Positions 3,995 through 50,985 of a DNA stretch of 64,000 nucleotides are shown here, one piece after another. The position numbers and the translations under genes were made by a program. The notes under the pieces are model-generated. The model ran no database searches and was not told the DNA's origin. It saw nothing but the letters and a program-made list of their open reading frames with translations. The stretch spans positions 62,001 through 126,000 of the IMG/VR virus record IMGVR_UViG_3300025364_000003; one strand, given 5' to 3'. Each line of letters starts with the position of its first letter. Position 1 is the stretch's first letter.

Positions 3995-4297
3995 ATGAGA
4001 GATCTTGATGAAGCCATCGGAAAGTTTGTTCGTATTGGTTACAACACAGTTGAATACAACAACGTAACCAGACCACGAGCTTATCCTGCGTGGCTCCCAG
4101 GTGTGGCTTTGAAACCAAGTTCATCGGAACCATATCTTTTTATACCACATGGTTCGGTAGTTTTGTTGATTTCGGCAGGTTACGACTTTAGTAGCATTTT
4201 TTATGGCGAGCAGGTTTTATTTGTTCATTCTGGACATTTGAGCAAAATGACTTCTGAAGAAGTAGAGGAGTGGGCAAATGCCCAACCGCAAGTTTAA
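3995..4297 (+). CDS. Hypothetical protein, SH3-like beta-barrel family
   Basis: GAGGA SD before ATG 3995 (MRDLDEAIGKFVRI...IPHGSVVLL). Confidence 0.65.
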   Translation: MRDLDEAIGKFVRIGYNTVEYNNVTRPRAYPAWLPGVALKPSSSEPYLFIPHGSVVLLISAGYDFSSIFYGEQVLFVHSGHLSKMTSEEVEEWANAQPQV

Positions 4298-4622
4298 AGT
4301 TCCTGAACCGGGGACATTAGTTTTGGCTAAGGGCCGTTGGTCTTTGTTTACCAAGGCTCCAAGTGTTATAATTAAAAACTATACAAGTTGGCCTGATGGT
4401 CGTGGTGAAGTCATTGAGCTGATTCCAGGACAACCTTTGATGTTTTTGGAGACAATAACCTGCCCAGGTAGTGTTACACTTGGCTACAATAAATTTGTTT
4501 ATAAGTTTTTGGCAGATGGTAAAGTAGCTTATACAGTTCCTACCAGAGACAAGCCGAAGAAGTTTTTGGCGCAACACGTTAGAATACCAAAGAATAAAAA
4601 TGAACGCAAAACCAGAAGTTAG
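4278..4622 (+). CDS. Hypothetical protein, SH3-like beta-barrel family
   Basis: PEPGTLVLA...IPGQPLMFLE...YKFLADGKV signature; overlaps both neighbours as in an operon. Confidence 0.75.
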   Translation: MPNRKFKVPEPGTLVLAKGRWSLFTKAPSVIIKNYTSWPDGRGEVIELIPGQPLMFLETITCPGSVTLGYNKFVYKFLADGKVAYTVPTRDKPKKFLAQHVRIPKNKNERKTRS

Positions 4623-27257: not shown

Positions 27258-27401
27258 TTTAAGATGAACCTCAAAAAATTGATAATCGGTTCATAATCCT
27301 GACCAAGTCTGTGATTCTTAGAATCATGGAGGTTGAGGCTAGCTCCTAAAAAGCCTCCCAACAACCAACCAAGTTCACAGAGAAACCAAAGGAAACAAAT
27401 C

Positions 27402-27878
27402 ATGCCCAAGCTCACTTCCACCGGTCGCAAGCCCGCTCTCGATCTCACCGGCGTCGAGTCCCTTCTCGGTCGCTACTTCTCGGAGGACCAGCCCGGCGTC
27501 GAGGCCCTCGCCAGCGAGTTCGAGATCACCCCGGCCACCGTCCGCAAGTACCTCAAGCTCGCCCTCGGCAGCCTTCCCCGTGGCCGTGCGGCCCTGCTCC
27601 CCCGTGAGCCCCGCAACGTCAAGGTGCTCATGAACGGCATCTCGACCGAGGATCTTCTCGGTGCCGGCCGGGTCGAGCTTCTCCTGCGTCACCGTGAGGC
27701 CGGCGTCAGCCTGACCGCCCTCGCCAGCGAGTTCGGGATCAGTCGTGACCGGGTGACCAAGCTCGTCCGGGCCCACGAGCCGGAGAGCGAGCCGGAGGTC
27801 GCCGAGGCGTCGCCGGAGCCGGAGAGCGTCCAGGTGCCCGATTCGGAGCCGGTCTGCCTCGACGAGGCGGTGGCCTGA
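27402..27878 (+). CDS. Tandem-HTH protein with sigma4-like C-terminal HTH and acidic tail (paralog 2)
   Basis: STGRKPALDLTG, ATVRKYLK, LPRGRAAL.PRE, LLG.GRVELL, LTALASEFGISRDRV shared with 8215..8748. Confidence 0.8.
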   Translation: MPKLTSTGRKPALDLTGVESLLGRYFSEDQPGVEALASEFEITPATVRKYLKLALGSLPRGRAALLPREPRNVKVLMNGISTEDLLGAGRVELLLRHREAGVSLTALASEFGISRDRVTKLVRAHEPESEPEVAEASPEPESVQVPDSEPVCLDEAVA

Positions 27879-34303: not shown

Positions 34304-35023
34304 ATGCCGATGACGAAGACCGCTACCGACGCCTACCTCGCTCTCCTCACCGCTGACCTCCTCACCCGTGAGGATGAGGTCGCCCTCGCTGCCATCGCCC
34401 AGGACACCGAACACCCCGAGTCCGAGAAGGCTCGTCAGGCCATGATCGAGGCCAACCTCCGGCTGGTGGTCCACGTGGCGAAGAAGTACCGTGGCCGTGC
34501 TTCCAAGCTCGGCGTGTCTTACATCGATCTCATTCAAGAGGGTAACATCGGTCTCATGACCGCTGTCGAGAAGTTCGATGGTGACCGTGGGCACCGCTTC
34601 TCCACCTATGCCGTTCACTGGATCCGTCAGTCCATCGGTCGTGCCCTCCAGAACAAGGCGAGCACGATCCGGGTCCCGGTTCACGTCCACGAGGTCGTGG
34701 GCAAGCTCAAGTCCGCCGCTCGGCTCATCGGTGAGATGAACGGTGAGGGTCCGACCCCGGCTGAGGTCGCTTCCTTTCTGGAGCTTCCCGAGGACAAGGT
34801 TACTCGCCTGTGGCAGTACGTCCGCCCCTGCGATTCCCTCGATCGTCAGGTGGGTTCCGAGGATGGTGACTCCGTGCTCGGTGACTTCGTGGAGGACACC
34901 GGCAACAGCCTGACCGATGCGGTCGACGATGCCGCTTCCAAGTCGCTCGTGCACACCGTGCTCCGCACCCTGACTCCCCGTGAGGAAAAGGTGCTCAAGC
35001 TCCGGTTCGCCGTCGGCGCCTGA
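34304..35023 (+). CDS. RpoD-derived sigma factor B, ending before region 4.2
   Basis: [71 protein letters not shown] then AVGA-TGA-TAG; GG-TTCATA-17-TAATAT-6-ATG promoter. Confidence 0.92.
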
Positions 35024-35332: not shown

Positions 35333-35356
35333 CATTCAAACCATAAGACTACAGAA

Positions 35357-35690
35357 GTCGTACGACTCAAGAGGGGTGAGAGCCCCCCTTTTCTTATGGG
35401 GGGGGCCCCCCCCTTTTCACCCCCTATCGAACCCCCCATGCTTATAGGGGGGGGTCCCCCTCCCCCCCCCCCGGACAAGATCAGTGGGGGTCCTATACTG
35501 GCATATGAGGTGCTTGACCCTCAAAAACAATTTTTGGGAAATTTTGAAAATGAAAACCCTTTTCGCAATATTTGGCCCTAAAATGAAGATTCTAAACAAA
35601 AGAGAGTGGAAAATCTGGTAGGAGACAAGGGGGGGGTATGAAATCAAATTGGGAATTAAAATTTTTGGGAAATTTTGAATTTTGAAAAGG
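35357..35690. other. Non-coding junction of G/C homopolymer runs, A/T tracts and a 20-nt direct repeat (candidate terminal-repeat end or packaging site)
   Basis: G8C8 near 35398-35413, further G8 and C11 runs, AATTTTTGGGAAATTTTGAA at 35529 and 35660; marks the GC-to-AT switch. Confidence 0.55.
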
Positions 35691-35738
35691 GTTGTTTATA
35701 GAATATTGTGCGGATATTAGTATTGAAGTAGCATTGAG

Positions 35739-36140
35739 TTGAGAATAGTTGCTTTAATGGTGGTTCTCGTAGAGGTGAAAACTGTTCACAAGAGCAAGGA
35801 GATAATTTTGGAGGGATTGCATTATCAAAAGACGGATGATCCTGCGTTTAGGGAATTTTATAAGGAACTTAGGGTTGGAGGGCTTTTTGAGGTGAGTGTC
35901 GATTATTATGAAACCGGAGCGTTCTTGGGAGGAGAATACTATGTGCTATTACCTGCTTTACTTCCAGGGAAGTCTATGATGTTTTTGGGTTGGATTGACT
36001 CTCCAGGGGAAGAGGTTGTTCTTAGGTCTGTTAGTGGATTTGAAAAAGTTTGGAAGCTTACAGGACCCAAGTGGCTCTTAGACGGCAAGGTATGGATACA
36101 ACGTGTGCCTACAGGTATACTCCAGCCTGTTGTGGGCTAG
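35739..36140 (+). CDS. SH3-like family protein (close paralog of the next gene's C-terminal domain)
   Basis: LLPGKSMMFLGWIDSPGEEVVLRS...LTGPKWLLDGKV. Confidence 0.75.
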   Translation: MRIVALMVVLVEVKTVHKSKEIILEGLHYQKTDDPAFREFYKELRVGGLFEVSVDYYETGAFLGGEYYVLLPALLPGKSMMFLGWIDSPGEEVVLRSVSGFEKVWKLTGPKWLLDGKVWIQRVPTGILQPVVG

Positions 36141-36179
36141 AGATAGTTGTGGGCTAGAGATAGTTGTGGGCTAGAGATA
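36129..36179. repeat. Tandem 3 x 17 nt GTTGTGGGCTAGAGATA spanning a stop codon
   Basis: Three exact copies at 36129, 36146 and 36163. Confidence 0.92.
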
Positions 36180-36203
36180 AAAGAGAAAATGAGGAACGGG
36201 AAA

Positions 36204-36827
36204 ATGAGTGGAAAGAAAAAAGGCGGTACAGATAAGCTTAAAGACTCTCCAGCTATTTCTAAAGAAGACAAGGGGCCTTATGATTCTCAGGGGAATCTTA
36301 GAGAAGGATGGGTACTTGACAGGGCTGGGAAACCTTGTTGGGCTCCTTTGTGGAACAAACAGGATGCAGAAGCACTTCAGTATTCTGTAGATGACACTCA
36401 GCAACGGATTGGGGAGTTGGAGTTAGAACTTGAGGCAAGTAAGCAACTAATCACGGAGCAATTCTTTCAGGCTTTAGCACCCGGTGAGTTGGTTGAGTGC
36501 ACAGGCATCTGTGACAAGATAGGTATTTATTCAGCACCTACGATAGTCTCCGGGGGTTTTTCAGAATGCTTTGAAGTGTTCCCTGGGTTATCTCCTGGAG
36601 AAACCATGCTTTACTTGGGCTGGGCAGACCCTCCAGGGGAAGAAATAAAACTAAGGTCTAACCGTGGCACAGAAAAAGTTTGCATGCTCACAGGGCCAAA
36701 ATGGCTTATAGGAGACCGAGTTTACATAGCATCGGTACCTATAGGATTGTTGAATCCTTATGAGATAGAGGTAGAAGATGAGTTCGCCCAAAAAATTGGA
36801 ATTGATTTTAAAGTTTTAGACGGATAA
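36204..36827 (+). CDS. SH3-like family protein with N-terminal coiled coil
   Basis: LSPGETMLYLGWADPPGEEIKLRS...LTGPKWLIGDRV; start 36189 or 36204. Confidence 0.75.
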   Translation: MSGKKKGGTDKLKDSPAISKEDKGPYDSQGNLREGWVLDRAGKPCWAPLWNKQDAEALQYSVDDTQQRIGELELELEASKQLITEQFFQALAPGELVECTGICDKIGIYSAPTIVSGGFSECFEVFPGLSPGETMLYLGWADPPGEEIKLRSNRGTEKVCMLTGPKWLIGDRVYIASVPIGLLNPYEIEVEDEFAQKIGIDFKVLDG

Positions 36828-36870
36828 AGTTTAGAATGGATAAAAGCAAAAGAAACTGAGGAAAGCAAAG

Positions 36871-37704
36871 ATGAGTAATATTAAGACGCCTCAAGAAATT
36901 TCGGCAGAGATTTTCGAACGGGTCATGAAGGCATTTAATGAGGAATATGATAACCATCCAATCAACGAAAAAGCTGAACAAGTTTTTTTGAAGGCAGAAG
37001 CAAGTAGACAGAAATACCTTGAGGAAATTTTTAATCAAGTAGACTTTGATATGGAGAAGGGAACATTGATCAAGATTGATCTTGGTCCTAGTGATTCTTC
37101 TATCCGTGGTCAATGGGAGCTTGGAATAAACCGTCCTAGTGAGTTAGAGGAGGGAGAAATTTTACTTTACACGGGATGGTTTTCTCGGGAGGTAAAAGTA
37201 TCTACTCAATCAAAAAAGGCAATGGTATCCAAACCTGAAGACACAGAAGTTTTCAAGAGGAAGGATGGTTCGATTGGAGTTCAAGTTTCTGAGACCAAGA
37301 AAGCAGAAATTAAGAAAGCAGAAGCTGAGAAAGAAGATAACAATGAAGATTTGGGAACCGCCTTTTCTTCTAAAATCCAAGTCTTCCTACGAGGAGGCAG
37401 GGAGGATGTGTGGACGGGTTTAATTCCTAGTTGTTATTATGTTACGGTGGCCAAGGGCTCTGGCGGCCCCTGTAAGGAGCCGTTATTTGTTCAAGAGCAT
37501 GGACTAATATTTGACCCTGCCATTATTGGCAAGGTCAAAGAAAAAAGCAGAGATGTATCTTTGCCGAAGCTTGAAGAAGAACCGCCTGCTTTGAAGCAAA
37601 TTATGGGTGAAACAGGCATGAAAACGGTTGCTGGGGAAGTCAAAGAACGCCACACAAAAGCAGAAATAGAAAAATTAGCTAAAGCTTTAAAAGCCAACTA
37701 TTGA
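36871..37704 (+). CDS. Hypothetical protein (SH3-like core)
   Basis: EKGTLIKI...LEEGEILLYTGW. Confidence 0.8.
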   Translation: MSNIKTPQEISAEIFERVMKAFNEEYDNHPINEKAEQVFLKAEASRQKYLEEIFNQVDFDMEKGTLIKIDLGPSDSSIRGQWELGINRPSELEEGEILLYTGWFSREVKVSTQSKKAMVSKPEDTEVFKRKDGSIGVQVSETKKAEIKKAEAEKEDNNEDLGTAFSSKIQVFLRGGREDVWTGLIPSCYYVTVAKGSGGPCKEPLFVQEHGLIFDPAIIGKVKEKSRDVSLPKLEEEPPALKQIMGETGMKTVAGEVKERHTKAEIEKLAKALKANY

Positions 37705-37832
37705 TTTCGTCATTTATTTGCTTGCTTGCTGACAAAGCTGGCAGACTTTTATTGTCTGATGTGGTTTGCCTTCGTTTTGGGATTTTATATCTATGTGTAA
37801 GAAAGTGAATAAAAATCTCTGGAGTATATGTC

Positions 37833-38501
37833 ATGTCTGGTCGCAACAAAAGGAATAAAGAAATCTTTAACAAGATATTCCGCAAGCTATGCAAACAGGT
37901 TAAACCTGAACAGTTGACTGCAAGCAGGAGGCGATGGGAGGATCGACATGTTGGGCCTAGATTGAATCAACCGATGACGGTATCAAAGTTTAAGCTTTTA
38001 TCGAAGGAGACCCGTAAGTGGTATTTGAAGGAACCGAGGAAATTTGAGGCATGGGCTCAAAATTGGGATAGCACTACGAGACGTATCCATGAGTTGGATC
38101 GACCGCCTTATAAAAATAAGAATGTTATTGACCGCAACAAATTGGAAAAATCCCGTGAGGGGTTGATCACGGAATATTTTGAATCATTGAGCCGTTTTGT
38201 AAGTGGCCACGAGGGCGTTGACCCTCTTTTGAGGGAGGTGACGCCCGAGGCCCGAGTCGAAGCCGTATTGGAAAGGAGGCGAGCGAAGGTCACGAATAAA
38301 ATGGCCCGAGGTGTCCTTTGGTCACCTGGGACATTGCTTGAAGTGAAGGACTTTCACAAACACACACATTACGGATGGGCCCCAACGATAGAGTGGGCAG
38401 GATGGTTTTTCCCGACGACCGACGTCAACTGGAAGGCCATGGTCGAAGCTTTTAGCGCAGGTCAATCGTTATTATGCATCTTCCATTACACATTCATTTA
38501 G
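37833..38501 (+). CDS. Hypothetical protein
   Basis: 222-aa ORF; WSPGTLLEVK segment. Confidence 0.75.
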   Translation: MSGRNKRNKEIFNKIFRKLCKQVKPEQLTASRRRWEDRHVGPRLNQPMTVSKFKLLSKETRKWYLKEPRKFEAWAQNWDSTTRRIHELDRPPYKNKNVIDRNKLEKSREGLITEYFESLSRFVSGHEGVDPLLREVTPEARVEAVLERRRAKVTNKMARGVLWSPGTLLEVKDFHKHTHYGWAPTIEWAGWFFPTTDVNWKAMVEAFSAGQSLLCIFHYTFI

Positions 38502-38502
38502 G

Positions 38503-39267
38503 ATGACAAAGAGTCGAATGACACTATCAAGAGAGCAAAGAAGAAACCATGATCCGCTAGAAATTGGCATTAACGATCTTCTAGCAATGTTGTTCAACCG
38601 CTTAGAAGGAGATTGCGATTTTGCTGCAAAAATGCAGTTTTCAAAAGTCAACATACCCGATCCAGCTATTCGCTGGGAAATGACGATGGGTAGAAATGGC
38701 AGTCCGGATTTCTGTGGTAGTCATAGCCATAAATTTGCCAATCGACGAGAACGTCGAGAATTTCTTGCAGAAAAGCGTCGATGGCTTCAGATGGCGATTG
38801 ATTGGAAGATAAAAGAACATGGCCAATTCTTCTCAGTTGGAGAGATGATAAAATTCAAGGATGTGGCACAATTTTATCCCATAACTGATGACATGCGTCC
38901 TTTTGTTCAAGAAACTATTGTCAAAGAAGGTAAAATTACAGATTTGGCCAATTTCCATGGGACGAGGCACAGACTGTTTTATCCTCAGTATCTTCATGCA
39001 GAAGACACTGCTTTAGTTGTCAAAGATCAGATCTTATACAAAGAAATGATTTCCAATCCGGATGATTGGGCAGGAGTTGTTCGATTCCAACGTGAAGTAG
39101 AATTGTTGCTTACGAGTTTTCGGAGCACTAATCATGTTGTGCCGAACGATCCTATGGACAAGAATGCCGATGAATGGAAGACCCGTAGGGCAATTCTATT
39201 GCTTTCGCCACACAACGTTTCAGGTCCTGGTCAGCAAAAGCGGCTTTTTGAACGAATGAGTGCGTAA
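38503..39267 (+). CDS. Hypothetical protein
   Basis: 254-aa ORF; FSVGEMIKFK segment. Confidence 0.8.
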   Translation: MTKSRMTLSREQRRNHDPLEIGINDLLAMLFNRLEGDCDFAAKMQFSKVNIPDPAIRWEMTMGRNGSPDFCGSHSHKFANRRERREFLAEKRRWLQMAIDWKIKEHGQFFSVGEMIKFKDVAQFYPITDDMRPFVQETIVKEGKITDLANFHGTRHRLFYPQYLHAEDTALVVKDQILYKEMISNPDDWAGVVRFQREVELLLTSFRSTNHVVPNDPMDKNADEWKTRRAILLLSPHNVSGPGQQKRLFERMSA

Positions 39268-39271
39268 ATAA

Positions 39272-39754
39272 ATGGCTTTTAATAAAAATTTCAAAAATTC
39301 TGTTATTGTCACATATACATCAGCAGATTTTCAAAGAGAGAGTCGCTTTAAAAGCTCTGAAGAAATGTTTATCAGGCTTTCGTACACGATTGGCATGGGT
39401 AAACCCAAGTCTGTTGATGATTTGTTTGGTGATTGTTTTACAGAAAAGGATTGGTGGTCAAGGTGGTATCCATTACTTGAATTGAAGGATTGGGCAGATT
39501 CGAATAATGGGTACAATCAATTAGTTCCAGGGCATCTGTCATCAGAAGTAAAAGCAAAGGCTCACACAATGGTTGAAGATTGGTCTGATATGCTTCTTCA
39601 GCTCTTAAACTTGGCTCGTCAAAAATGGCAATCACCCGCAATTTCAGTGGGGCAATTTATTAGAGCAGCCGAAGACGTGAGTAGAGAAAGCCATTCGCTA
39701 AGCTATAGACAATATATGCACCCATCTTCTGCTTTTGTTTCTAACAGATATTGA
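39272..39754 (+). CDS. Hypothetical protein
   Basis: 160-aa ORF in the operon. Confidence 0.75.
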   Translation: MAFNKNFKNSVIVTYTSADFQRESRFKSSEEMFIRLSYTIGMGKPKSVDDLFGDCFTEKDWWSRWYPLLELKDWADSNNGYNQLVPGHLSSEVKAKAHTMVEDWSDMLLQLLNLARQKWQSPAISVGQFIRAAEDVSRESHSLSYRQYMHPSSAFVSNRY

Positions 39755-39950
39755 ATGTGAAAAACGTTGGCAGCAAAAATCAACAAGTCTACCTGATGGG
39801 CTTATTCCTGATTTGTGGTTTTATCGAATTGTCAAGTGTTTAATGGTTTTGGAAGAAACGCCCAAAACCATTTGTTTGTTCATTAATCCAGAGTGGTCTG
39901 TTGATGATTTGATTCACTATGGTTTTGCATCAGCTGTAAAATAGTGTAGA

Positions 39951-40379
39951 ATGACGAGATTAAGCAGAGAAAGAATTCGCTCGTTGGATCCAAGGATTGT
40001 TCCTCCAACGCCTGAAGGATATAAAAAAGTTGTGCTTGACAGTTACGAATATTTGTCAACACTAACACCGGGAGATGTGGTATTTTCTTATTTTGCGCAA
40101 TATTGGTTGCGGTTTGATGAAACAAATGATGGCTATCCTATAACGGGTGGTATGCATTTTGTTAGTCCCGGTGTCCCTTTGATGTATTTGAAACCAACTG
40201 AATGGTATGCGGCCGATTCAATGGAAATCATTTCCTCAGCTCTTTGGCTTGTAGAAGATAAAATTAGAATTATTAATCCACTACCCGAAATAGTTGCCTT
40301 TTGGACAGATGAAAGAGTTTATGACTTCCTAAGAAAGTATGAACTTGGTTTAGATGATATTTGGATTCTGGTAGACTAA
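39951..40379 (+). CDS. SH3-like family protein
   Basis: LTPGDVVF...VSPGVPLMYL...LWLVEDKI. Confidence 0.75.
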   Translation: MTRLSRERIRSLDPRIVPPTPEGYKKVVLDSYEYLSTLTPGDVVFSYFAQYWLRFDETNDGYPITGGMHFVSPGVPLMYLKPTEWYAADSMEIISSALWLVEDKIRIINPLPEIVAFWTDERVYDFLRKYELGLDDIWILVD

Positions 40380-40903
40380 TTTCGGAGCTATGCGAGGTCT
40401 TTGTCTTGTTAAACACTATTGAAAAAACTATTGACAAGTTTTGCTGGCTATTGGTAAAAGCATTTCCAAGTAGAGTGAGAACAATTGAAGTTGAAGGTGA
40501 TAAATACCTACTTCGTTTTTATCTAAAGCATAGCAGCAAAAGATTTCCAGGTCTTTATCTACATTACTTTTATCGAGGTGACCAAGACAGAGATTTACAC
40601 AACCATCCTTGGACAAAGTCGGTATCATTGATATTGACTGGTGGTTATGTTGAGGAAAGACTCTCTAAGAAAGAGAAGATTGGACCAAACTACAAAGTTA
40701 TTAAGAGAGTTGTTGGTCCTGGCTCTTTAAACGTGATTAGGTCTGATGATTTTCATAGAATTGATTTAATCGGTGGTTCTACTTGGACTCTTTTCACAAG
40801 CGGCAAAAAAGTAAAAGATTGGGGATTTATAATCCGTGAAACTGGAAAGTACATGGACCACGTTACTTACGAAAAAACAAAATTAAATCAAAAAACTCAA
40901 TAG
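40361..40903 (+). CDS. Cupin-fold protein
   Basis: LHYF...D.DRDLHNHPW...SLILTGGYVEE...FHRIDL...WTLF. Confidence 0.8.
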   Translation: MDSGRLISELCEVFVLLNTIEKTIDKFCWLLVKAFPSRVRTIEVEGDKYLLRFYLKHSSKRFPGLYLHYFYRGDQDRDLHNHPWTKSVSLILTGGYVEERLSKKEKIGPNYKVIKRVVGPGSLNVIRSDDFHRIDLIGGSTWTLFTSGKKVKDWGFIIRETGKYMDHVTYEKTKLNQKTQ

Positions 40904-40939
40904 TAAATTCTTTCGACAAAACAAATCTACAATTTTTTC

Positions 40940-41584
40940 ATGAGGCAAAAAAAGCAAACATACAGTGTCCAAATGCCTGATAAATCAGGTGAAAACAAAA
41001 TATATTCAAAGATTGAAAACTTCATCAATATGATGTTTGATGATGAAGCTCAACATGACTTGATGGTCAAACATAAAAATCGTGCTTCCTGGGCAATGGA
41101 CAATATACGTGTTGGTTCGTTATTAACCACAAACTGTTCATATTTGTTAAACCTTTTTAACAATAAAGCTGATGGTAAACCTTTTGTTTCTAGTTGGATG
41201 GAAACGTTGCCTAAAAGCAGTCAGATTATGTCGTTGGGTTATCAACTAATTCAAATACATCGCTCTAACGTAGGGGAACCCCTCTCAGAACCAACTTACG
41301 AAATCCGTCACAAGTGGTTAATAAACGACAAAACCTTGCTTTGCAATATTCATCCAATGAATTTTGAGGTATCACAAATGGGGGCAGGGGATGTTTGGCA
41401 CGAATCTCTTCAAAAAGAACACAATAGAGCTACTCAGCTTTTGAATAAAAAATATAAAATCGACGATGAAGAAAAAATAACTTGTAAATTACTTCTTCCG
41501 CAATTAGAAACATTGGTCAATTTTTGGTCTGGTGCAATGGCAGGTAATCCAGTTCGGGTTGATGCTTTTGTAGATGATGAATAA
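40940..41584 (+). CDS. SH3-like family protein
   Basis: IRVGSLL...LPKSSQIMSLG...KWLINDK. Confidence 0.75.
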   Translation: MRQKKQTYSVQMPDKSGENKIYSKIENFINMMFDDEAQHDLMVKHKNRASWAMDNIRVGSLLTTNCSYLLNLFNNKADGKPFVSSWMETLPKSSQIMSLGYQLIQIHRSNVGEPLSEPTYEIRHKWLINDKTLLCNIHPMNFEVSQMGAGDVWHESLQKEHNRATQLLNKKYKIDDEEKITCKLLLPQLETLVNFWSGAMAGNPVRVDAFVDDE

Positions 41585-41634
41585 ACTTACGAAAGCAAGT
41601 GTTTTGTAAATGATCAACGACAAAAAACGTATTT

Positions 41635-42003
41635 ATGCCAATAGATCAACTCAACAAACTCGTGTCGCAACTTGAAGATTTTGAGCGGCAACTAAAAGAA
41701 GTAGAAGAAAAACAAAAATTGTTATTTGAGTTTGTTTTAAAAAATGGTGATATAAAACCAGGTGCTGTATTTGAAGTGTTGACAACGCAACATACATTAT
41801 GCCAAACCCAAAATGATAAAAATAAGAAAAAACACATCTTGATAAAAAAAGGCCAAACAATTATGTTTGTAGGTGTTGAAACAAGAAATGACAATTTGAT
41901 GTATGATTGGTTAATAGAAGAGAAAGTTACTTCAATTCATCCTGGTAACATAGTAACCAATATTGGTTTGGTGAAAACCGGCGGGTCGAATGAATCTACA
42001 TAA
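41635..42003 (+). CDS. SH3-like family protein with N-terminal coiled coil
   Basis: IKPGAVFEV...IKKGQTIMFVG...DWLIEEKV. Confidence 0.8.
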   Translation: MPIDQLNKLVSQLEDFERQLKEVEEKQKLLFEFVLKNGDIKPGAVFEVLTTQHTLCQTQNDKNKKKHILIKKGQTIMFVGVETRNDNLMYDWLIEEKVTSIHPGNIVTNIGLVKTGGSNEST

Positions 42004-42433
42004 TCCAGATAACTTTGATGAAAAAGTTAGAAACAAAAAAAGGCAAATCGTTTCTAAGGATGAGCTTGATTATAAGATAGAGTTGCCTGTGGTAGGTAAA
42101 CTTTATCAGGTCATTGCCGACAATGAATTTAACGATAAAATTCAAGCATGTTTTGTTCAAGAATTTGAGGAAGCAGCATATGCTAATACTGTGGCAAATT
42201 TTCCTACACTATATCGAGTTCGAAAAACTGTAGACGTACCAAAAGGCGAAGTGCTGCTCCTTCTTGATTACATTATTGAAAAATTACTTTACTTGCAATC
42301 TGCTGAAAAGAACGCAGCATACTCAATATTGTCAAAGTTTCTTTGGCAAGAACGTGTGGTATACTTTACGCATTGGGTAACCCCTAAATATAATGAATTC
42401 TACAACAAACTTTCTCTTTCTCCTGGAGAATAA
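41990..42433 (+). CDS. SH3-like family protein
   Basis: PVVGKLYQV...VPKGEVLLLL...KFLWQERV. Confidence 0.8.
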   Translation: MNLHNPDNFDEKVRNKKRQIVSKDELDYKIELPVVGKLYQVIADNEFNDKIQACFVQEFEEAAYANTVANFPTLYRVRKTVDVPKGEVLLLLDYIIEKLLYLQSAEKNAAYSILSKFLWQERVVYFTHWVTPKYNEFYNKLSLSPGE

Positions 42434-42771
42434 TGATGTCTTCCAACTGGACTAAAGAACTGTCAGCATGGTGTCAAAAGAAGAGATGGTCAAAACCAAT
42501 TTTTGATAAAAGAAAACAAAAACCAGCAGTTGTGCCCAAAAAGGGAATGTTGGTTCGAAAAAAAGAGTATTATATTTATTCTGATTTGTTACGTTTGCTT
42601 GACAGTGAAGACACTGGCAGTGGGCCGTTCTTTTGCATTATTGATTCTATTGTTGATGAAAGAGGAAGGTGCATATTCAAATATATTTCATCTGAAGAAA
42701 TCCAATGGACTGAATGGATGACGGTTAAAGAATTCAATGAAGAATGGTACATACAAAATCCTTGGATTTAA
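42433..42771 (+). CDS. SH3-like family protein
   Basis: PKKGMLVR...FCIIDSIV; TAATG coupling. Confidence 0.75.
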   Translation: MMSSNWTKELSAWCQKKRWSKPIFDKRKQKPAVVPKKGMLVRKKEYYIYSDLLRLLDSEDTGSGPFFCIIDSIVDERGRCIFKYISSEEIQWTEWMTVKEFNEEWYIQNPWI

Positions 42772-42792
42772 ACACGAAAAACTTTGAACGCA

Positions 42793-42901
42793 GATTGTAA
42801 TACAAAGATTTTTAATCCAACTTCTGAAAACATAAGGTTATGTTTTCGGGCGAACGACAATAATGGATTATAAACTTGTTTTTTATCTTTTTATTACAAT
42901 C
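42793..42901. other. Nested intergenic hairpin (three tiers)
   Basis: GATTGTAATA/TATTACAATC, TAATCCA/TGGATTA and CTGAAAACATA/TATGTTTTCGG. Confidence 0.6.
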
Positions 42902-42993
42902 AACAAACCAATAACAAAAGACCTAATTCGCAGGGTTTCTTGTTATCTTGCTAGTCAGGTAGTGGTACAATCTGCTTAGGAGTAAATTTAAAC

Positions 42994-43374
42994 ATGGCTA
43001 AGGAAACTGAAAGTATGGACAAGCTCAAAATTGATAATTCGGTTCAGGATGACGATGACCCCAAAAATTTTAAAACCGTTTCAAACGGAGCGGGTAGCCT
43101 TTTGCGGATCAAGCAAAATATTGAACATGTAATGAAGATTAAAGATCGTTCTTTTATTGAACTTGAAACAGGCGAAGGAGTTCTTGTACTTTATGATTTT
43201 CTAAATATAAAGACGGAGGAACGAACATTAATCTTCTTAATTGAAGAATCTCAGTATATGTATATGACCAAGGACTTTGACAAAGAATTTGAAGTTCTTC
43301 GTACTGGCACATACGAACATTCAAACATTGAAAAAGACTCAAATATAACTCAAGCCATTGAGGATTTGGAATGA
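42994..43374 (+). CDS. SH3-like family protein
   Basis: AGGAG SD; LETGEGVLVL..LIFLIEE. Confidence 0.75.
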   Translation: MAKETESMDKLKIDNSVQDDDDPKNFKTVSNGAGSLLRIKQNIEHVMKIKDRSFIELETGEGVLVLYDFLNIKTEERTLIFLIEESQYMYMTKDFDKEFEVLRTGTYEHSNIEKDSNITQAIEDLE

Positions 43375-43970
43375 TTCCTAATGTCAATGAAGAAAAATTT
43401 GATTTTGCAAATGTAAAGGCTGGTACATTAGTTTTTGTCAAGGACACAGTCCCATGCTTCAAACCTCAAAACCTTGAAGACAAAAGCAAAAAAATTCTCA
43501 TGAGTCCCCGCCATTACTCTGGCACGGTCAATTTATCAGGAAATGTTGTTCTTCTCACAAAAATTTCAATTGAAGAAAAAGAAAAGGACGAGCCTTTCTT
43601 TTCTGGGGCAGAAGCCCGACGTTATACTCTTGAAGTTCTTCACGAGGGAAAACTTTATTGTTGTGAAGTTGACACATATTCTCTCGTAAAAAGTTTGGAT
43701 TTTCTTCACATCCCAGAACGACCGATAACTGACAAAACAGATTTGTGGCTAACCACATATTTCGGTGTTGATTGCAACCCCTTTAGGGTCAGGAAAGATT
43801 TCCGGGCTCGCCGAGGAAATAGTTTGGAAGATTTGAAAAAATATCGTCGTCGACTGCCAAGAAGAGACGATGCAGTCAAAACCTTTTATGTTAAAGAGGG
43901 AGAGTTGTGCATTTGCATTGGTGCTCGAAGATCAGCTGCTCGCAGGCTCATCATAATTGATTTTTTGTAA
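43371..43970 (+). CDS. Double SH3-like protein, second domain cut by a stop right after T-TTT-TTG
   Basis: VKAGTLVFVKD...VKEGELCICIG; the -1 frame continues FFVNGVLCWIEL to 44137. Confidence 0.75.
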   Translation: MIPNVNEEKFDFANVKAGTLVFVKDTVPCFKPQNLEDKSKKILMSPRHYSGTVNLSGNVVLLTKISIEEKEKDEPFFSGAEARRYTLEVLHEGKLYCCEVDTYSLVKSLDFLHIPERPITDKTDLWLTTYFGVDCNPFRVRKDFRARRGNSLEDLKKYRRRLPRRDDAVKTFYVKEGELCICIGARRSAARRLIIIDFL

Positions 43971-44066
43971 ATGGCGTTCTGTGCTGGATTGAATTGGAAG
44001 AGACCAGGAAATCCAAAGCAAAGAGATTTGAGCAATTTTTTTATTCTCTGAAGGGAGCAACACCTT

Positions 44067-44492
44067 ATGAAAAGGATCTCAGCACTGAAAGCCGCATTAG
44101 AAGCGAAGAAGGCTGTTCCACAGATTTCCACATCTAGTTTTAATAAAATTAGCTTAAATGGTGAAGGCTTATTGTTGCATTGCATCCTTCCGTTTGAAGG
44201 AAAATTTAAAAGAATAACAGACAAGAGTGGTCGAAATATGTATATCATGCCTGTAATTTCAAAGGATAGCGTTGTTCTTTTCTTAGGTTGTTGGCATTAT
44301 AAGATGAAATTGAAGCCACCAGTGCTAGATGTCGTAGCTAAAAAGGAATTAACTTCACCAATTTGGACCACATGTTTGCGATTCCTGAGTGGACAAGATA
44401 TAGTTAAAGTTGATTGGCACGGAAATGACAAACTTGATCAGTTATATCAAGCTGCAAGTTTTATTTATAAGCATTTCCGACTATGCGAATAG
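44067..44492 (+). CDS. SH3-like family protein
   Basis: ISKDSVVLFLG...RFLSGQDIV. Confidence 0.7.
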   Translation: MKRISALKAALEAKKAVPQISTSSFNKISLNGEGLLLHCILPFEGKFKRITDKSGRNMYIMPVISKDSVVLFLGCWHYKMKLKPPVLDVVAKKELTSPIWTTCLRFLSGQDIVKVDWHGNDKLDQLYQAASFIYKHFRLCE

Positions 44493-44505
44493 GTGAAGGA
44501 ATGCA

Positions 44506-45045
44506 ATGATTTTTATACTTTTTCTCGTGTTGCAAGTTGTACTTGGGTTGTTTTATGGCAACTTTATGGAATGGTTGCTGCACAAATACCTACTGCATAA
44601 CTTAGGCAAAAGGAAAAAATCATCTTTTTCATTTCACTGGTTTGATCATCATAGAAAATCTAGGTTGCATAATTTCTATGATGATGATTATGAAAAAAGC
44701 ATTTGGAATTGGAATGCAAGAGGAAAGGAAGCCGCAGGACTAGGGTTATTATGGTTAGCACATTCCTGGCTTTTCTTTATAGTTCCCGTGTTTGCTTTCA
44801 CAATAACCTATTGCGTATTCAATTATTATATAACGCACAAAATAGCTCATGAGAATCCTGGTTGGGCAAAAATTCATCTTAGATGGCACTGGGAACATCA
44901 CATGGGTAAAAACCAAGAAGCCAACTATTGTGTTACAAAACCTTGGTGTGATTACTTGTTTGGGACCCGTATTCATTATCGGGAAAAAGTTTTAAGAACT
45001 GGAAAAACAAAAATGATACCAATAAAGGAAAACTTTTTTAAATGA
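44506..45045 (+). CDS. Fatty acid hydroxylase / sterol desaturase superfamily membrane protein
   Basis: His boxes EWLLHKYLLH, HWFDHH, HKIAH, HWEHH; C-terminal NY.VT.PW.DYLFGT; TM segments. Confidence 0.88.
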   Translation: MIFILFLVLQVVLGLFYGNFMEWLLHKYLLHNLGKRKKSSFSFHWFDHHRKSRLHNFYDDDYEKSIWNWNARGKEAAGLGLLWLAHSWLFFIVPVFAFTITYCVFNYYITHKIAHENPGWAKIHLRWHWEHHMGKNQEANYCVTKPWCDYLFGTRIHYREKVLRTGKTKMIPIKENFFK

Positions 45046-45476
45046 CAACAGACGAAAGCAATTTCTCAAAAAAAGTTGGAATGACGCTTTCATTTGGTAG
45101 TGAGCAAACACCGTCTAAAGGATGGATACATTTAATTAAAGAAAGAAAAGTGCCCTCTGAAGCCCCGTGGAGAAAAGGCTCCCTAATAAAGGTAAATAAC
45201 TCTCCAGCTCCCTCTAAAATTCTAAACAACTCAGTTGTTATGTTTCTCGAACACAGTCTCATCAAATATAAGGTTTCTGAAACCGAGTACGTTACTGTGG
45301 TAGAAAGCAAAGATACAGAAGATGAGTTAATGGTAACAGCACATGAAAGAAAAGAAACAGACCATCTTCAACACCGAATTACTGTCCTTTTTGACGAAAA
45401 GATTGTTAATCTATACTCACAAGAACTTAGAGGCAACTTTGGAGAGGTGGATAAACAAGAAGCAGGAACAAGATGA
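45042..45476 (+). CDS. SH3-like family protein
   Basis: WRKGSLIKV...LNNSVVMFLE...TVLFDEKI. Confidence 0.75.
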   Translation: MTTDESNFSKKVGMTLSFGSEQTPSKGWIHLIKERKVPSEAPWRKGSLIKVNNSPAPSKILNNSVVMFLEHSLIKYKVSETEYVTVVESKDTEDELMVTAHERKETDHLQHRITVLFDEKIVNLYSQELRGNFGEVDKQEAGTR

Positions 45477-45834
45477 TTGGCGGCAGGTTGAAAAAATTGT
45501 TAATGAATTTAATATACGAGGCTCGGATAGATTTTACGTTGTTCCTGGCAACTTATTGCAACTAAAAGACCAGAATTTTATTAAACCATCAACACTTTCT
45601 CCTGTCGTGTTTTTACCAAAACCTGGGTCCAAGCTTATTAAAACGCCCGAACCAGGTGACACTTTCATGGTTGTATCTCATTCTTTCTCTCAAAAAGAAA
45701 AGGGAAAATTGAACATAGAAATGCTTTGGGGGGACAGAATAGTATTGGCAATAATAGACATGAAAAAATACTCTGTAAGAGATGTATTTTTTATTATTTC
45801 GTCATCATCAGACTGTCGTAAAACCAAACTCTGA
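45343..45834 (+). CDS. SH3-like family protein (true start probably later)
   Basis: VVPGNLLQL...PEPGDTFMVV...EMLWGDRI. Confidence 0.7.
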   Translation: MKEKKQTIFNTELLSFLTKRLLIYTHKNLEATLERWINKKQEQDDWRQVEKIVNEFNIRGSDRFYVVPGNLLQLKDQNFIKPSTLSPVVFLPKPGSKLIKTPEPGDTFMVVSHSFSQKEKGKLNIEMLWGDRIVLAIIDMKKYSVRDVFFIISSSSDCRKTKL

Positions 45835-45958
45835 GCTTGGTCTAATTTATAAAATAAATTTAACAAAATCAAAAAACGTCGTTTACAACTCTGTTTTTCT
45901 TTGTGATACTCATTGAATCGAAATAAAACTTAGATAAAGTATTGTTTGAAAGACTTTT

Positions 45959-46267
45959 TTGAAGAAGACCGAGATGAAAAAAGGTAATAACGATATGCTC
46001 TTATTGAGAACAATAGCCAAGTTTGGTTTTAGCGATAGACCTTGGATATCAACTGAAATTCCTGTTGGTGTCATTGTAAAATTTGTACGTACAATTAAAC
46101 CAAAAATATCAGCACATTCGCAATGTTATTATCACGGACACGGTTCCAATAAATGTCGACACATTGTGATTGAATGGGATGGAATCGAAGTGCCGACTTC
46201 CATTTGTATGGAGGACGCAGCGCTTCATTATTTTGTCGAGGTCAAGACGCAAAATGAGCAATCCTAA
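45959..46267 (+). CDS. Hypothetical beta-barrel protein
   Basis: IPVGVIVKFV...HIVIEWDG; TTTACA-17-GATACT promoter upstream. Confidence 0.65.
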   Translation: MKKTEMKKGNNDMLLLRTIAKFGFSDRPWISTEIPVGVIVKFVRTIKPKISAHSQCYYHGHGSNKCRHIVIEWDGIEVPTSICMEDAALHYFVEVKTQNEQS

Positions 46268-46568
46268 TGGACTTGAAGGACATGAAGGAAAGCTTCTTCA
46301 AGTAAAATCCTTGATCGCCGGATACCCAAAGTGCGAAAATAAAGAGAAGTGGGAAAAATGGGAAACCGCTACACCTGCTAGATGGAGCGGCAGTCAGGAC
46401 TTAGAAGCAGGTACAGTAGGCATGATTGTTTCTTTCGGGGTAGACCGATACGAACAAGCATGGCTTGATTTACTGACAGATGAGAAGGTTTTTAGAATCT
46501 TCTTTAGATACAACCGATGGATGGACCACTTTATCCCATGGCCACATGGTGCGTTTTTAAGAGAATAA
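46254..46568 (+). CDS. SH3-like family protein
   Basis: HEGKLLQVK...LEAGTVGMIV...DLLTDEKV. Confidence 0.75.
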   Translation: MSNPNGLEGHEGKLLQVKSLIAGYPKCENKEKWEKWETATPARWSGSQDLEAGTVGMIVSFGVDRYEQAWLDLLTDEKVFRIFFRYNRWMDHFIPWPHGAFLRE

Positions 46569-46619
46569 ACTCACTCTCTTAAAATTTCGAATATTTTGTT
46601 CGCTATTTAAATTGGCAAT

Positions 46620-47012
46620 ATGGCGTTTCCGTTTATAACAACTGATAAACGTTTTTTTCTTTTACAAGATGGTGTTGAGTATCTTGTACCCGATTCAAGC
46701 TTATTTGATGTCAACCAACAGCCTTTAGATTTTGATTTTTATAAGGTAGAACCCGGTGCTCAATCCGAAGAGTTGATTACAACGCTGTTGCCAGGTGACA
46801 GAGTTTTGAAAACTCTCAACTCAAATGGTGATGTAATCATCACACTCATTAAGCTAGATCCCGACACTGGTGATCGAAATCCTACATTCCAAAATAGAAG
46901 TGCCTTGGGTGACCCAGAAGGTACAGATTATTATCTATATGTTGGCGAAGGTGTAGATTTTAGTGGAGGCCAAAGCGGTCCCCCTGGACCCTCGGGACCT
47001 GGTGGTTTATAA
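46620..47012 (+). CDS. Hypothetical protein with Gly-Pro tail (possibly virion)
   Basis: 130-aa ORF ending GGQSGPPGPSGPGGL. Confidence 0.7.
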   Translation: MAFPFITTDKRFFLLQDGVEYLVPDSSLFDVNQQPLDFDFYKVEPGAQSEELITTLLPGDRVLKTLNSNGDVIITLIKLDPDTGDRNPTFQNRSALGDPEGTDYYLYVGEGVDFSGGQSGPPGPSGPGGL

Positions 47013-47104
47013 TTAAGCGAGTTCGGGTTCTATTTGACAGCTAATCAAACTTTACACTTTTACTATTCTATATTATCCTACTCAACAGCAACAATGGTAA
47101 ATTC

Positions 47105-47941
47105 ATGACTACGGATAATAAACAAAAGAATATTTCAACTAAGTTGAAAATTGGAAATCTTGTTTTCATAAAGACACACAACGCTTTCAGTGGCCACGGA
47201 AATAATTGGGCGACACAAACAACGGGTAAAATTACTCTTCCAAGTTATCAGCGTTCTATATCGCATAGAACAGTAACGGTTCCATATGTTGAACCGCAGA
47301 CAAACACGGGAGGTTGGTACGTAGAATCTCTTGACATTGATAATCATTCATATGATTATAGTGAAGTAATCGATACTACTGGCAAGTTTTCTAGTGAAGA
47401 AATCAATTCTCTAAAACAACTTTATGATGCTTATCTAAACCAAAGTTCTGGCAAAGGTAGGGGTAATAGTGGCAACCTTGGGATGTCCACATGGAACAGA
47501 CCTCCTGCATTTAGCTCGTCAAACAACTGGAAAATCACGACCGGTACTGCCAATGCCACCATTAGCCCAACAACTTTTGGAGGCACGGCAATAATATCCA
47601 CAAGCCTTCCAACGCAGCTTGACGTTTCTTTTTATGCCCATGGATTTGAAAAAATTGAAGACTATTTCAAGGGTCGTGTAAAGCCTGTAGAACAAAAAGA
47701 AGGCTTTACTGAAAAGGAAATTGAGAGTTTGAATAAAACTAAAAACCTGTCGCTTACCTGGGGGAAACCGTTTAAGGGTATAATCGTCGATGTGTTTTCG
47801 CCCAAGTTAAAAACTGTAACTGGCGAAGAGGTAAATCTTGATGTAACCAAAATGCCAACGCTGTACAAAGTATTAATTGATGAAAACAATTGTCTTTGGT
47901 TTAACGCAGACGATGTTTACGAAATGACCGATGAGGAATGA
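47105..47941 (+). CDS. SH3-like family protein with large Ser/Thr/Gly insertion
   Basis: LKIGNLVFIK...FKGIIVDV...YKVLIDENNCLWF. Confidence 0.8.
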   Translation: MTTDNKQKNISTKLKIGNLVFIKTHNAFSGHGNNWATQTTGKITLPSYQRSISHRTVTVPYVEPQTNTGGWYVESLDIDNHSYDYSEVIDTTGKFSSEEINSLKQLYDAYLNQSSGKGRGNSGNLGMSTWNRPPAFSSSNNWKITTGTANATISPTTFGGTAIISTSLPTQLDVSFYAHGFEKIEDYFKGRVKPVEQKEGFTEKEIESLNKTKNLSLTWGKPFKGIIVDVFSPKLKTVTGEEVNLDVTKMPTLYKVLIDENNCLWFNADDVYEMTDEE

Positions 47942-50163: not shown

Positions 50164-50985
50164 ATGGCACGCAACGAATCATTCTTTCAAAGACTAATCG
50201 AAAGTCATGCTCTTATTCCCCTGGTGCGCAAAGCTCACATGGGCAAGTCTGGGATTTATTTAATTCACAATGTAAGAACTGACCGGTTTTATGTTGGAAG
50301 TGCTACCAACCTCTATACTAGAAAAAATGTTCACCTGACTCAACTAAGAAAAAATAAGCATCACAATATCTTCCTTCAAAGAGATTTTAATAAGACTAAC
50401 GGTGAAATCAAATTTTTTGTATTACATTCAACAGAGAAATCATTACTGATTTCCAAGGAACAAGAAATTTTAGACAAGGTTTTTGGAAAGTCAGATTGTT
50501 ATAACCTAAATCCAATTGCCAATAGCTGGTTGGGTCGAAATCACAATGAAAAAACCAAAAATTTGTTGTCAGTTATAGCACTCAAAAGAAAAATTTCAAA
50601 TAAAACTCGTAAAAAAATGAGCGAATCTAAAAAGGGAATTCCGCTTCCTGAAAACCACTCAATCAGAAACGGCCACAGCGAAAAAACGAAAGAAAAAATC
50701 AGAAATTCGATGATTGGTCAGAAAAATCACTTTTTTGGCAAGACGCATTCAAAAAAAACAAAGAAAAAAATCAGTGAAAGTCTAAAGGGAAAATATTTTG
50801 GTCCCAAAAGCAAAATAAAGGCAACAAACATTATTTCTAGTGAAGTGTTATATTATGAAAGCATGGCCGAAGCTGCCAGAGATTTGAAATTAAACCAAGG
50901 GCATATTAGCAGTGTCTGCTCAGATAAATTTCAACAAACGGGGGGCTGGAAATTTGTAAAGGTGGAAAACAATGGCTCGGAATGA
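50164..50985 (+). CDS. Free-standing GIY-YIG homing endonuclease with NUMOD3-like repeats; begins with the portal's first 11 residues
   Basis: SGIYLI...FYVGSA..R, HHN..LQ.DF, HSEKTKEKI and HSKKTKKKIS repeats, C-terminal YESMAEAARDL HTH. Confidence 0.92.
   Translation: MARNESFFQRLIESHALIPLVRKAHMGKSGIYLIHNVRTDRFYVGSATNLYTRKNVHLTQLRKNKHHNIFLQRDFNKTNGEIKFFVLHSTEKSLLISKEQEILDKVFGKSDCYNLNPIANSWLGRNHNEKTKNLLSVIALKRKISNKTRKKMSESKKGIPLPENHSIRNGHSEKTKEKIRNSMIGQKNHFFGKTHSKKTKKKISESLKGKYFGPKSKIKATNIISSEVLYYESMAEAARDLKLNQGHISSVCSDKFQQTGGWKFVKVENNGSE

What the first reader, a model, noticed from the sequence alone, without database searches (positions are those of the whole stretch)
35739..47941. Expansion of ~20 highly divergent SH3-like beta-barrel paralogs
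Seen: many 'hypothetical' ORFs share a three-part signature: xxG(x)L(V/I)x(V/I), then (I/V/L)xxG(E/T/S)x(L/V)(M/L)(F/Y)(L/V), then (K/x)(F/W)Lxx(D/E)(K/R)(V/I). Examples are IKPGAVFEV/IKKGQTIMFVG/DWLIEEKV, PVVGKLYQV/VPKGEVLLLL/KFLWQERV and LLPGKSMMFLG/KWLLDGKV. Members also occur at 4.0-6.3 kb and 62.2 kb. Only the first two are close paralogs. Inference: an accordion-like family with a conserved fold and variable loops, possibly binders or decoys for host defence proteins. The fold call is by pattern only.
Basis: inference. Interest (0 to 1): 0.6.

Follow-up and report, generated by a model that had tools for sequence, protein, structure and literature searches.

The report
Divergent SH3-like paralogs, huge phage
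A huge phage from hypersaline lakes carries a real but very divergent family of small proteins. They have no database match, are predicted to share an SH3-like beta-barrel, and sit in an old, conserved gene row whose function is unknown.

Summary
The three-part signature is real, but fewer genes carry it than claimed. Of 24 ORFs in 35739-47941, 11 are statistically supported members. Four are probable, seven are unsupported, and two belong to other families (a cupin and a fatty-acid-hydroxylase-like protein). ORF 4278 is a member; ORF 62200 is not supported. At least 9 more members lie outside the window in the same 206.5 kb phage record.

Homology rests on an unaided MAFFT alignment of all three blocks, leave-one-out HMM and PSSM tests against shuffled decoys, and hhalign between disjoint member sets (93% probability, E 2.7e-7). 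Two AlphaFold models (pLDDT 76 and 80) give a six-strand barrel. Their weak structural neighbours are nearly all SH3-like (FeoA, DtxR C-terminal domain, RecD2/Dda and Abl SH3, 3g1j). No neighbour is significant.

The family has no Pfam, PHROG or PDB sequence match. It has eight foreign hits (seven credible relatives) among 1.84 billion representative proteins.

"Accordion-like" is not supported. Each paralog has its own orthologue in conserved order in distant contigs, dN/dS is about 0.08, and only one pair is close.

Function is inferred only. The most likely reading is a repertoire of binding modules in a fast-evolving accessory gene block.

The parts
35739..36140 (+). Family member (domain about 35841-36134); close paralog of 36147
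   Evidence: BLASTP E 1e-22 to 36147. In alignment A1. Leave-one-out HMM E 0.018 with both members of the close pair removed. The database gene call P0001 starts 6 codons later.
36147..36827 (+). Family member with a long N-terminal helix, an SH3-like barrel and an acidic C-terminal tail
   Evidence: AlphaFold model m2a8f4f814a34: pLDDT 80, helix at residues 52-90, strands across 96-185. Six foreign orthologues: P0009, P0011, P0015-17, P0019. hhalign of A2 against A3 gave E 2.7e-7.
36871..37704 (+). Family member: N-terminal helical part, domain at about residues 50-136, long C-terminal extension
   Evidence: Recruited by the iterated HMM at E 0.038, ahead of all decoys. Its orthologue-group profile against A2 gave E 1.9e-4 over 66 columns. 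Orthologues sit next to the 36147-type gene in L059 and L060.
37833..38501 (+). Probable member; only blocks 1-2 are seen, at the C-terminus, and the ORF ends just after block 2
   Evidence: hhalign score 18.6, above all 120 decoys. Orthologue-pair profile against A1 gave E 0.0048 over 44 columns. The L060 orthologue is 308 aa, against 222 aa here.
39951..40379 (+). Family member
   Evidence: In A1. PSSM leave-one-out p 0.006. Leave-one-out HMM only E 1.0. Local alignment to 41635 covers block 3.
40361..40903 (+). Not a member: cupin / cysteine-dioxygenase-like gene interspersed in the row
   Evidence: PHROG 4786, E 1.8e-33.
40940..41584 (+). Family member (domain at about residues 48-142)
   Evidence: In A1. 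PSSM leave-one-out score 30.9, p<0.0004. Leave-one-out HMM did not recover it (E 12). Collinear three-block alignment with 41635. Orthologue in L060, E 1.5e-21.
41635..42003 (+). Family member; the reference domain that was folded (41725-41970)
   Evidence: Leave-one-out HMM E 8.9e-6, rank 1. AlphaFold model m851e6f6635f9: pLDDT 76, pTM 0.65, six strands. The ESM Atlas holds its own model with pTM 0.62.
41990..42433 (+). Family member with a long loop between blocks 1 and 2
   Evidence: A1 HMM E 0.003 as a non-training sequence, ahead of all decoys. PSSM leave-one-out score 36.3.
42994..43374 (+). Probable member (blocks 1-2 match)
   Evidence: hhalign score 15.5, above the 95th percentile of decoys, over 32 columns. 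PSSM p 0.027.
43371..43970 (+). Family member (domain at residues 6-109) plus a C-terminal extension
   Evidence: Leave-one-out HMM E 2.5e-4, rank 1. PSSM leave-one-out score 32.9.
44067..44492 (+). Probable member (strong block 2)
   Evidence: hhalign score 19.4, above all 120 decoys. PSSM p 0.0125.
44506..45045 (+). Not a member: fatty-acid-hydroxylase-like protein
   Evidence: Pfam FA_hydroxylase, E 4.4e-7, 30.8 bits against a curated cut-off of 31.
45042..45476 (+). Family member; the N-terminus also resembles blocks 2-3 of 46170
   Evidence: A1 HMM E 1.7e-4 as a non-training sequence. PSSM leave-one-out score 29.4. Local alignment to 46170 has z 4.3.
45343..45834 (+). Family member (the database gene call P0003 is 131 aa, so the true start is probably near 45439)
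   Evidence: Leave-one-out HMM E 0.012, rank 2. P0003 identity to this ORF confirmed.
46170..46568 (+). Family member (likely start 46254)
   Evidence: In A1. PSSM leave-one-out p 0.0008. Leave-one-out HMM did not recover it (E 31). Orthologue P0014 is 74% identical, with dN/dS 0.08.
47105..47941 (+). Possible member (block 1 at the N-terminus; a motif-like C-terminus seen by eye)
   Evidence: hhalign score 15.0, above the 95th percentile of decoys. PSSM p 0.027. Not individually significant.
4278..4622 (+). Family member outside the row, in a lower-GC patch of the GC-rich block
   Evidence: BLASTP E 0.025 to 35739. Leave-one-out HMM E 0.0096, rank 2. PSSM score 38.0.
35333..35738 (.). Non-coding boundary upstream of the row: G/C-run palindromes at about 35370-35475 and a 15-nt direct repeat at 35534 and 35665. 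Possibly a terminator and promoter region for the row.
   Evidence: Sequence read directly. The repeat occurs only at these two places in the 206 kb record. Contigs of two runs span the boundary.

Best explanation
SHOWN. The window is part of a huge T4-like phage from hypersaline lakes. The record is 206.5 kb, and the same phage is also assembled as a 461 kb contig. The phage encodes a lineage-restricted family of small cytoplasmic proteins that has no match in Pfam, PHROGs or PDB sequences. There are at least 21 supported members in the 206 kb record, and 11-15 of them lie in the row at 35.7-48 kb.

The shared domain is about 80-100 residues. Three conserved hydrophobic blocks map onto predicted strands:
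- beta1: 'PGxLhxh'.
- beta4: 'GxxhMhL'.
- the beta5-turn-beta6 hairpin: 'KhLxE/DxKhh'.
A short helical turn follows beta6 in the 82-residue model.

AlphaFold predicts a six-strand SH3-like barrel. The segment between beta1 and beta4 (the RT-loop position), the termini and the net charge vary widely.

The duplications are old. Each paralog has its own orthologue in conserved gene order in distant metagenomic contigs and is under purifying selection. Relatives whose portal is 55-59% identical share no recognisable orthologue of any row gene. One of them, G001, has its own cluster of weakly matching small ORFs.

INFERRED. Only fold-determining residues are conserved across the family, while surfaces, loops and appended helices or acidic tails differ. 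The genes sit in a dense, one-directional block of small accessory ORFs that evolves much faster than the core genes. The most likely role is therefore a repertoire of stable binding modules, each keeping a distinct partner (a host or phage protein), used in host takeover or counter-defence. It is not a recently amplified array.
For: Family and homology.

Fold:
- Models have pLDDT 76 and 80.
- Abl and Pex13 SH3 domains appear in the Foldseek list for the second model, and SH3_3 clusters in the ESM Atlas at TM 0.48-0.54 for the first.

Restriction: 17 hits in 1.84e9 representatives, 9 of them from this genome. There is no Pfam, PHROG or PDB sequence hit.

Age and constraint:
- L029 keeps the order 45959, 46170, 46620.
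- L060 keeps the order 36147-type, 36871, 37833, then 40940.
- dN/dS is 0.08-0.09.

Accessory status: none of the row ORFs has a phmmer homologue in G001 or G002, while 79 of 298 ORFs of the genome do in G001. G001 shows 14 weak PSSM matches against 4.4 expected, clustered at 242-314 kb.

Surface diversity: pI 4.6-10.2.
Against: - No functional evidence of any kind exists: no expression data, no partner and no known host.
- Conserved order and strong purifying selection also fit subunits of one conserved machine. They are not typical of arms-race genes.
- Four of 12 seed members fail the plain leave-one-out HMM test.
- Seeds were first picked by eye, which leaves some circularity. It was reduced by the leave-one-out runs, the decoys and the disjoint-set hhalign.
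Confidence: 0.55

Rival explanations
1. Recent accordion-like amplification. Tandem copies were made and lost quickly under selection from host defences.
For: The genes are tandem and on one strand. One pair (35739 and 36147) is still 42% identical. In L029 the gene upstream of the 45959 orthologue differs from the window's 45343. A related strain has an in-frame 147-nt skip in 36147.
Against: All other pairs are below BLAST detection. Orthologues of individual paralogs keep their order in distant contigs. dS is saturated and dN/dS is about 0.08. There are no near-identical repeats.
Confidence: 0.05
2. The members are nucleic-acid-binding or RNA-polymerase/ribosome-binding regulators, working like KOW, Tudor (CarD/Mfd RID) or Sm domains. 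They would retune transcription or translation together with the phage's own sigma factors.
For: CarD, Mfd RID, Tudor domains and Hfq are among the weak structural neighbours. The row starts directly downstream of a sigma-70-type gene at 34304-35023, and a second sigma gene lies at 18106-18804. Some members are very basic, with pI 9-10.
Confidence: 0.15
3. The members are structural or assembly parts: paralogous subunits of a virion or assembly structure, or packaged internal proteins. This would explain the conserved order and the purifying selection.
Against: Relatives that share the portal and 79 core ORFs have no orthologue of any row gene. Members are scattered in three small-ORF regions and on both strands. 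A cupin and a hydroxylase gene are interspersed in the row.
Confidence: 0.12
4. There is no true family. The signature is a generic beta-strand and turn pattern that unrelated small beta-rich proteins share by convergence.
For: The blocks are short and mostly hydrophobic. Four seeds fail the leave-one-out HMM.
Against: hhalign between disjoint sets gave E 2.7e-7 with collinear blocks. Real ORFs of the same genome and of G002 do not score. The seeds aligned without guidance.
Confidence: 0.05

Closest known systems
Stand-alone prokaryotic SH3-like proteins (FeoA; C-terminal SH3-like domain of DtxR/IdeR/ScaR)
   Different: There is no sequence relation. Those are single-copy genes tied to iron or manganese regulation (own knowledge). 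Here there are more than 20 paralogs in a phage, with long insertions at the RT-loop position.
Vibrio cholerae integron cassette protein VCH_CASS4 (PDB 3g1j)
   Different: Its function is unknown. Identity is 13%. The match is not significant.
Bacterial SH3b / SH3_3 cell-wall-binding domains (phage endolysin binding domains, InlB GW domains)
   Same: The fold class is the same. They recur among weak hits in PDB, BFVD and the ESM Atlas.
   Different: There is no Pfam SH3_3 match. The family is not fused to lytic enzymes, and I saw no signal peptide when reading the sequences (no predictor was run).
Lineage-specific expansions of small domains in jumbo phages (for example about 35 zinc-ribbon copies and Myb-type HTH proteins in Bacillus phage G; Iyer et al. 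2021, PMC7824862)
   Same: The phenomenon is the same: one giant phage lineage multiplies one small domain into tens of divergent copies of unknown role.
   Different: The domain differs: an SH3-like barrel rather than a zinc ribbon or HTH. Here the copies have fixed orthologues in related phages.
Poxvirus genomic accordions (K3L amplification) - own knowledge
   Same: Tandem paralogs in a large DNA virus, thought to face host defences.
   Different: Accordion copies are near-identical and their number changes within passages. Here the copies are ancient, individually conserved and ordered.

Membership tests
SH3-like small beta-barrel fold class | Five to six antiparallel strands forming a small barrel, with a long loop after strand 1 and a short 3-10 turn before the last strand | tested here: met
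   DSSP of model 1 gives strands at 15-17, 24-29, 35-40, 45-54, 57-64 and 67-71, then a helical turn at 73-75. In model 2 the strands span residues 96-185. This rests on predictions with pLDDT 76-80, not on solved structures.
SH3-like small beta-barrel fold class | Significant structural superposition on solved SH3-like domains | tested here: inconclusive
Pfam SH3_3 / SH3b, KOW, Tudor, FeoA families | Sequence match to the family HMM at or above its threshold | tested here: not met
   No such family matched any member at E<=1 or at E<=10 for the 12 domains of A1. The A1 profile against PDB sequences gave nothing below E 0.8.
   hhalign of A2 against A3, which share no sequence: probability 93.3%, E 2.7e-7, 73 columns.
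   11 supported, 4 probable, 7 unsupported and 2 in other families.
Genomic accordion | Near-identical tandem copies whose number differs between close relatives | tested here: not met
   Only one pair is detectable by BLAST, at 42% identity. Orthologues keep their order. dN/dS is about 0.08 with saturated dS.
Lineage-specific expansion | Many copies in one lineage, few or none in relatives and elsewhere | tested here: met
   At least 21 copies in G000. G001 has only weak matches, 14 against 4.4 expected, and G002 has none. There are 8 foreign hits (7 credible relatives, plus Cys-rich P0010, a likely false hit) in 1.84e9 representatives.
Anti-defence or host-takeover proteins | Demonstrated binding to or inhibition of a host factor, or early expression | not testable with these tools
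   The host is unknown. No RNA run holds the stretch.

The most novel reading that the evidence does not exclude
The phage keeps a fixed 'library' of more than 20 SH3-like binders built on one scaffold. Each has a different RT-loop insert and surface charge. Together they recognise a panel of host proteins (defence or takeover targets), as a viral counterpart of scaffold-based binder repertoires.
Probability: 0.15. Interest if true: 0.7.

Novelty: new member of a known kind. Interest (0 to 1): 0.4.

Why it matters
Huge phages are filled with small ORFs that have no annotation. This work shows that a good share of one such region, and of two other regions in the same genome, collapses into a single sequence family with no database match, a common fold and conserved orthologue groups.

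That gives a handle for structural and interaction studies. It also gives a profile (alignments A1 and A2) that can annotate related metagenomic phages.

It shows as well that an apparent gene 'expansion' can be ancient and stably inherited rather than a fast-turnover array. This changes what kind of function one should look for.

Tried and rejected
- A two-sequence HMM seeded from 35739 and 36147 found nothing beyond decoys. Wider seeds were needed.
- Genome-wide hhalign runs timed out twice. Only 24 candidates and 120 decoys were scored.
- Pfam, PHROG and PDB sequence searches were blank for the family.
- The language-model look-alike search gave only sub-threshold leads. The T4 PinA-like 'Inhibitor_I24' cluster scored 0.76, which is within the range of shuffled proteins, so I rejected it as evidence.
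- IMG/VR scans with 46170 and 36147 returned only the same phage's 461 kb contig.
- Megablast of the row against GenBank phages gave no match.
- The portal segment recruited by the iterated HMM (residues 503-588, E 0.071) was treated as a false positive and removed.
- ORF 14347-15093 passed the PSSM but is a leucine-rich, low-complexity ORF in the GC-rich block. I dropped it.
- The sigma-70 promoter and terminator scan was no better than shuffles.
- I checked whether the GC shift at 35.4 kb is a chimeric join. It is not: contigs of two runs span it.


Full report
CONTEXT

The window is bases 62001-126000 of a 206.5 kb IMG/VR virus record, which CheckV rates 45% complete. Its portal gene (50972-54199) is T4-like and is interrupted by an intein with an HNH domain. 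The portal is 100% identical to the one on a 461 kb IMG/VR contig, so this is a huge phage. It occurs in five hypersaline-lake metagenome runs, and a related strain occurs in a microbial-mat run.

The finding's interval is a dense, one-directional block of 24 small ORFs. It lies between a GC-rich block (window 1-35.4 kb, 49-60% GC in 2-kb windows except one 42% patch, against about 39% elsewhere) and the head genes.

IS THE SIGNATURE REAL?

BLASTP all-against-all confirms that only 35739 and 36147 are close (E 1e-22). ORF 4278 against 35739 is marginal (E 0.025), and nothing else is detectable.

Pairwise Smith-Waterman z-scores are nevertheless shifted within the row compared with row-versus-outside pairs (Mann-Whitney p 2.5e-5). 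The best local alignments put the same three motifs in register.

MAFFT aligned twelve domain segments with all three blocks in columns, without guidance (A1). Further tests:
- An HMM of A1 ranked six non-training ORFs ahead of every one of about 1500 shuffled or reversed decoys.
- In leave-one-out runs, 8 of 12 held-out seeds ranked in the top 6 of about 1800 sequences.
- A gapped three-block PSSM with leave-one-out scoring passed 19 short ORFs at decoy p<0.002, against 0.5 expected.
- The cleanest test used two sets that share no sequence: the 36147 orthologue group plus 35739 (A2), and twelve other members (A3). hhalign matched them at 93.3% probability and E 2.7e-7 over 73 columns that include all three blocks.
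- G002, a related phage fragment, showed no enrichment and serves as a negative control made of real proteins.

HOW MANY MEMBERS?

Inside 35739-47941:
- Eleven ORFs are supported: 35739, 36147, 36871, 39951, 40940, 41635, 41990, 43371, 45042, 45343, 46170.
- Four are probable, on one or two blocks: 37833, 42994, 44067, 47105.
- Seven have no support: 38503, 39272, 39735, 42433, 45959, 46620, 47931.
- Two belong to other families: 40361-40903 is cupin-like (PHROG 4786) and 44506-45045 is FA_hydroxylase-like.

ORF 4278 is a solid member. ORF 4600 is a KTSC protein, and ORF 62200 is unsupported.

The family is not confined to the row. At least nine further members lie outside the window, mostly in two other small-ORF stretches of the record (30-44 kb and 55-62 kb) and three on the far side.

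FOLD

AlphaFold with the paralog alignment gave an 82-residue model with pLDDT 76 and pTM 0.65. It has six strands and a helical turn after the sixth strand. Block 1 is strand 1, block 2 is strand 4, and block 3 is the strand 5-turn-strand 6 hairpin.

A second model, built for 36147 on an independent alignment made mostly of orthologues, reached pLDDT 80. It has a 39-residue helix followed by the barrel.

No structural match is significant. The lists for the barrels are nevertheless made up almost entirely of SH3-like domains:
- SH3, KOW and endolysin binding-domain proteins in BFVD.
- SH3_3 clusters in the ESM Atlas at TM 0.48-0.54, with the best Atlas row overall at 0.63.

So the SH3-like call holds at fold-class level only.

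DISTRIBUTION AND AGE

A profile search of 1.84 billion representative proteins found 17 hits. Nine are this genome's own proteins. One is a Cys-rich repeat protein and is probably false.

The rest are six 36147-type proteins, one 46170 orthologue and one other member. Their contigs show conserved order:
- L029 carries orthologues of 45959, 46170 and 46620 in that order.
- L059 carries the 36147-type gene followed by the 36871 orthologue.
- L060 carries the 36147-type gene, then orthologues of 36871 and 37833, two unmatched genes, and then the 40940 orthologue.

dN/dS is 0.08-0.09 for 46170 and 45959, with saturated dS. A related strain keeps the first row genes at 94-97% nucleotide identity (five of six pieces; the sixth is a 175-nt contig with 9 differences). 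That strain has an in-frame 147-nt skip in the N-terminal part of 36147.

By contrast, G001 (portal 59% identical) shares 79 of 298 ORFs with this genome but no row orthologue. It does have a cluster of weak family-like ORFs at 242-314 kb: 14 above the 99th decoy percentile against 4.4 expected.

The picture is an old, ordered set of distinct paralogs inside a fast-evolving accessory region. It is not an accordion.

FUNCTION (INFERRED)

Across the family only fold-forming residues are conserved. Start-to-start spacing between blocks 1 and 2 ranges from 24 to 68 residues. pI ranges from 4.6 to 10.2. Members carry different additions, such as a coiled helix or an acidic tail.

This fits one stable scaffold used for many specific contacts, and I rate that reading the most likely. 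The rivals are RNA-polymerase or nucleic-acid binders and structural subunits. The conserved order and purifying selection keep both alive.

No expression data were found.

Noticed in passing
window 1-35400: A 35 kb GC-rich block (49-60% GC in 2-kb windows, one 42% patch) in a genome of about 39% GC. It holds two sigma-70-type genes (18106-18804 minus strand, 34304-35023 plus strand), four tRNAs (Glu, Leu, Lys, Ala), a T4-type RNA ligase, an amidoligase, a KaiC-like ATPase and a DUF2201 metallopeptidase/VWA gene. Several of these have strong homologues in the related phage G001, so the block is phage core and not foreign. Contigs of two runs span its right edge.
   Followed up: partly
window 35370-35700: Long G and C runs form palindromes (GGGGGGG/CCCCCCC). 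Downstream, a 15-nt direct repeat (TTGGGAAATTTTGAA) occurs at 35534 and 35665 and nowhere else in the 206 kb record. This may be a terminator plus a control site for the row.
   Followed up: partly
window 50972-54199: The T4-like portal gene is interrupted by an intein with an HNH endonuclease domain. The small ORF 58545-58856 resembles portal residues 628-711 (BLASTP E 0.002).
   Followed up: no
window 50164-50985 and 63086-63931: Two GIY-YIG-type paralogs, 31% identical (E 9e-11). One lies directly upstream of the portal. They are probably homing endonucleases.
   Followed up: no
window 60121-61788: A phage-encoded GroEL-type chaperonin, 44-46% identical to those of Bacteroides and Vibrio phages.
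   Followed up: no
window 8215-8748 and 27333-27878; locus L030 1110-1490: A pair of HTH paralogs (59% identical). In a foreign contig, a 54%-identical homologue lies two genes downstream of a family member (P0013).
   Followed up: no
window 36128-36389: In the microbial-mat strain (run X6), contigs skip 34 nt at 36128-36163 and 147 nt in frame at 36241-36389. The second skip removes part of the N-terminal region of 36147. Assemblies of three other runs all break near 36130-36160.
   Followed up: no
window 37833-38501 vs locus L060 2431-3357: The window copy is 222 aa and stops just after block 2, while its orthologue is 308 aa. The window gene may be truncated, or the next ORF may have replaced its end.
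   Followed up: no
window 45042-45476: The N-terminal residues 11-37 resemble blocks 2-3 of 46170, and they sit ahead of a complete domain. This may be a remnant of a partial internal duplication.
   Followed up: no
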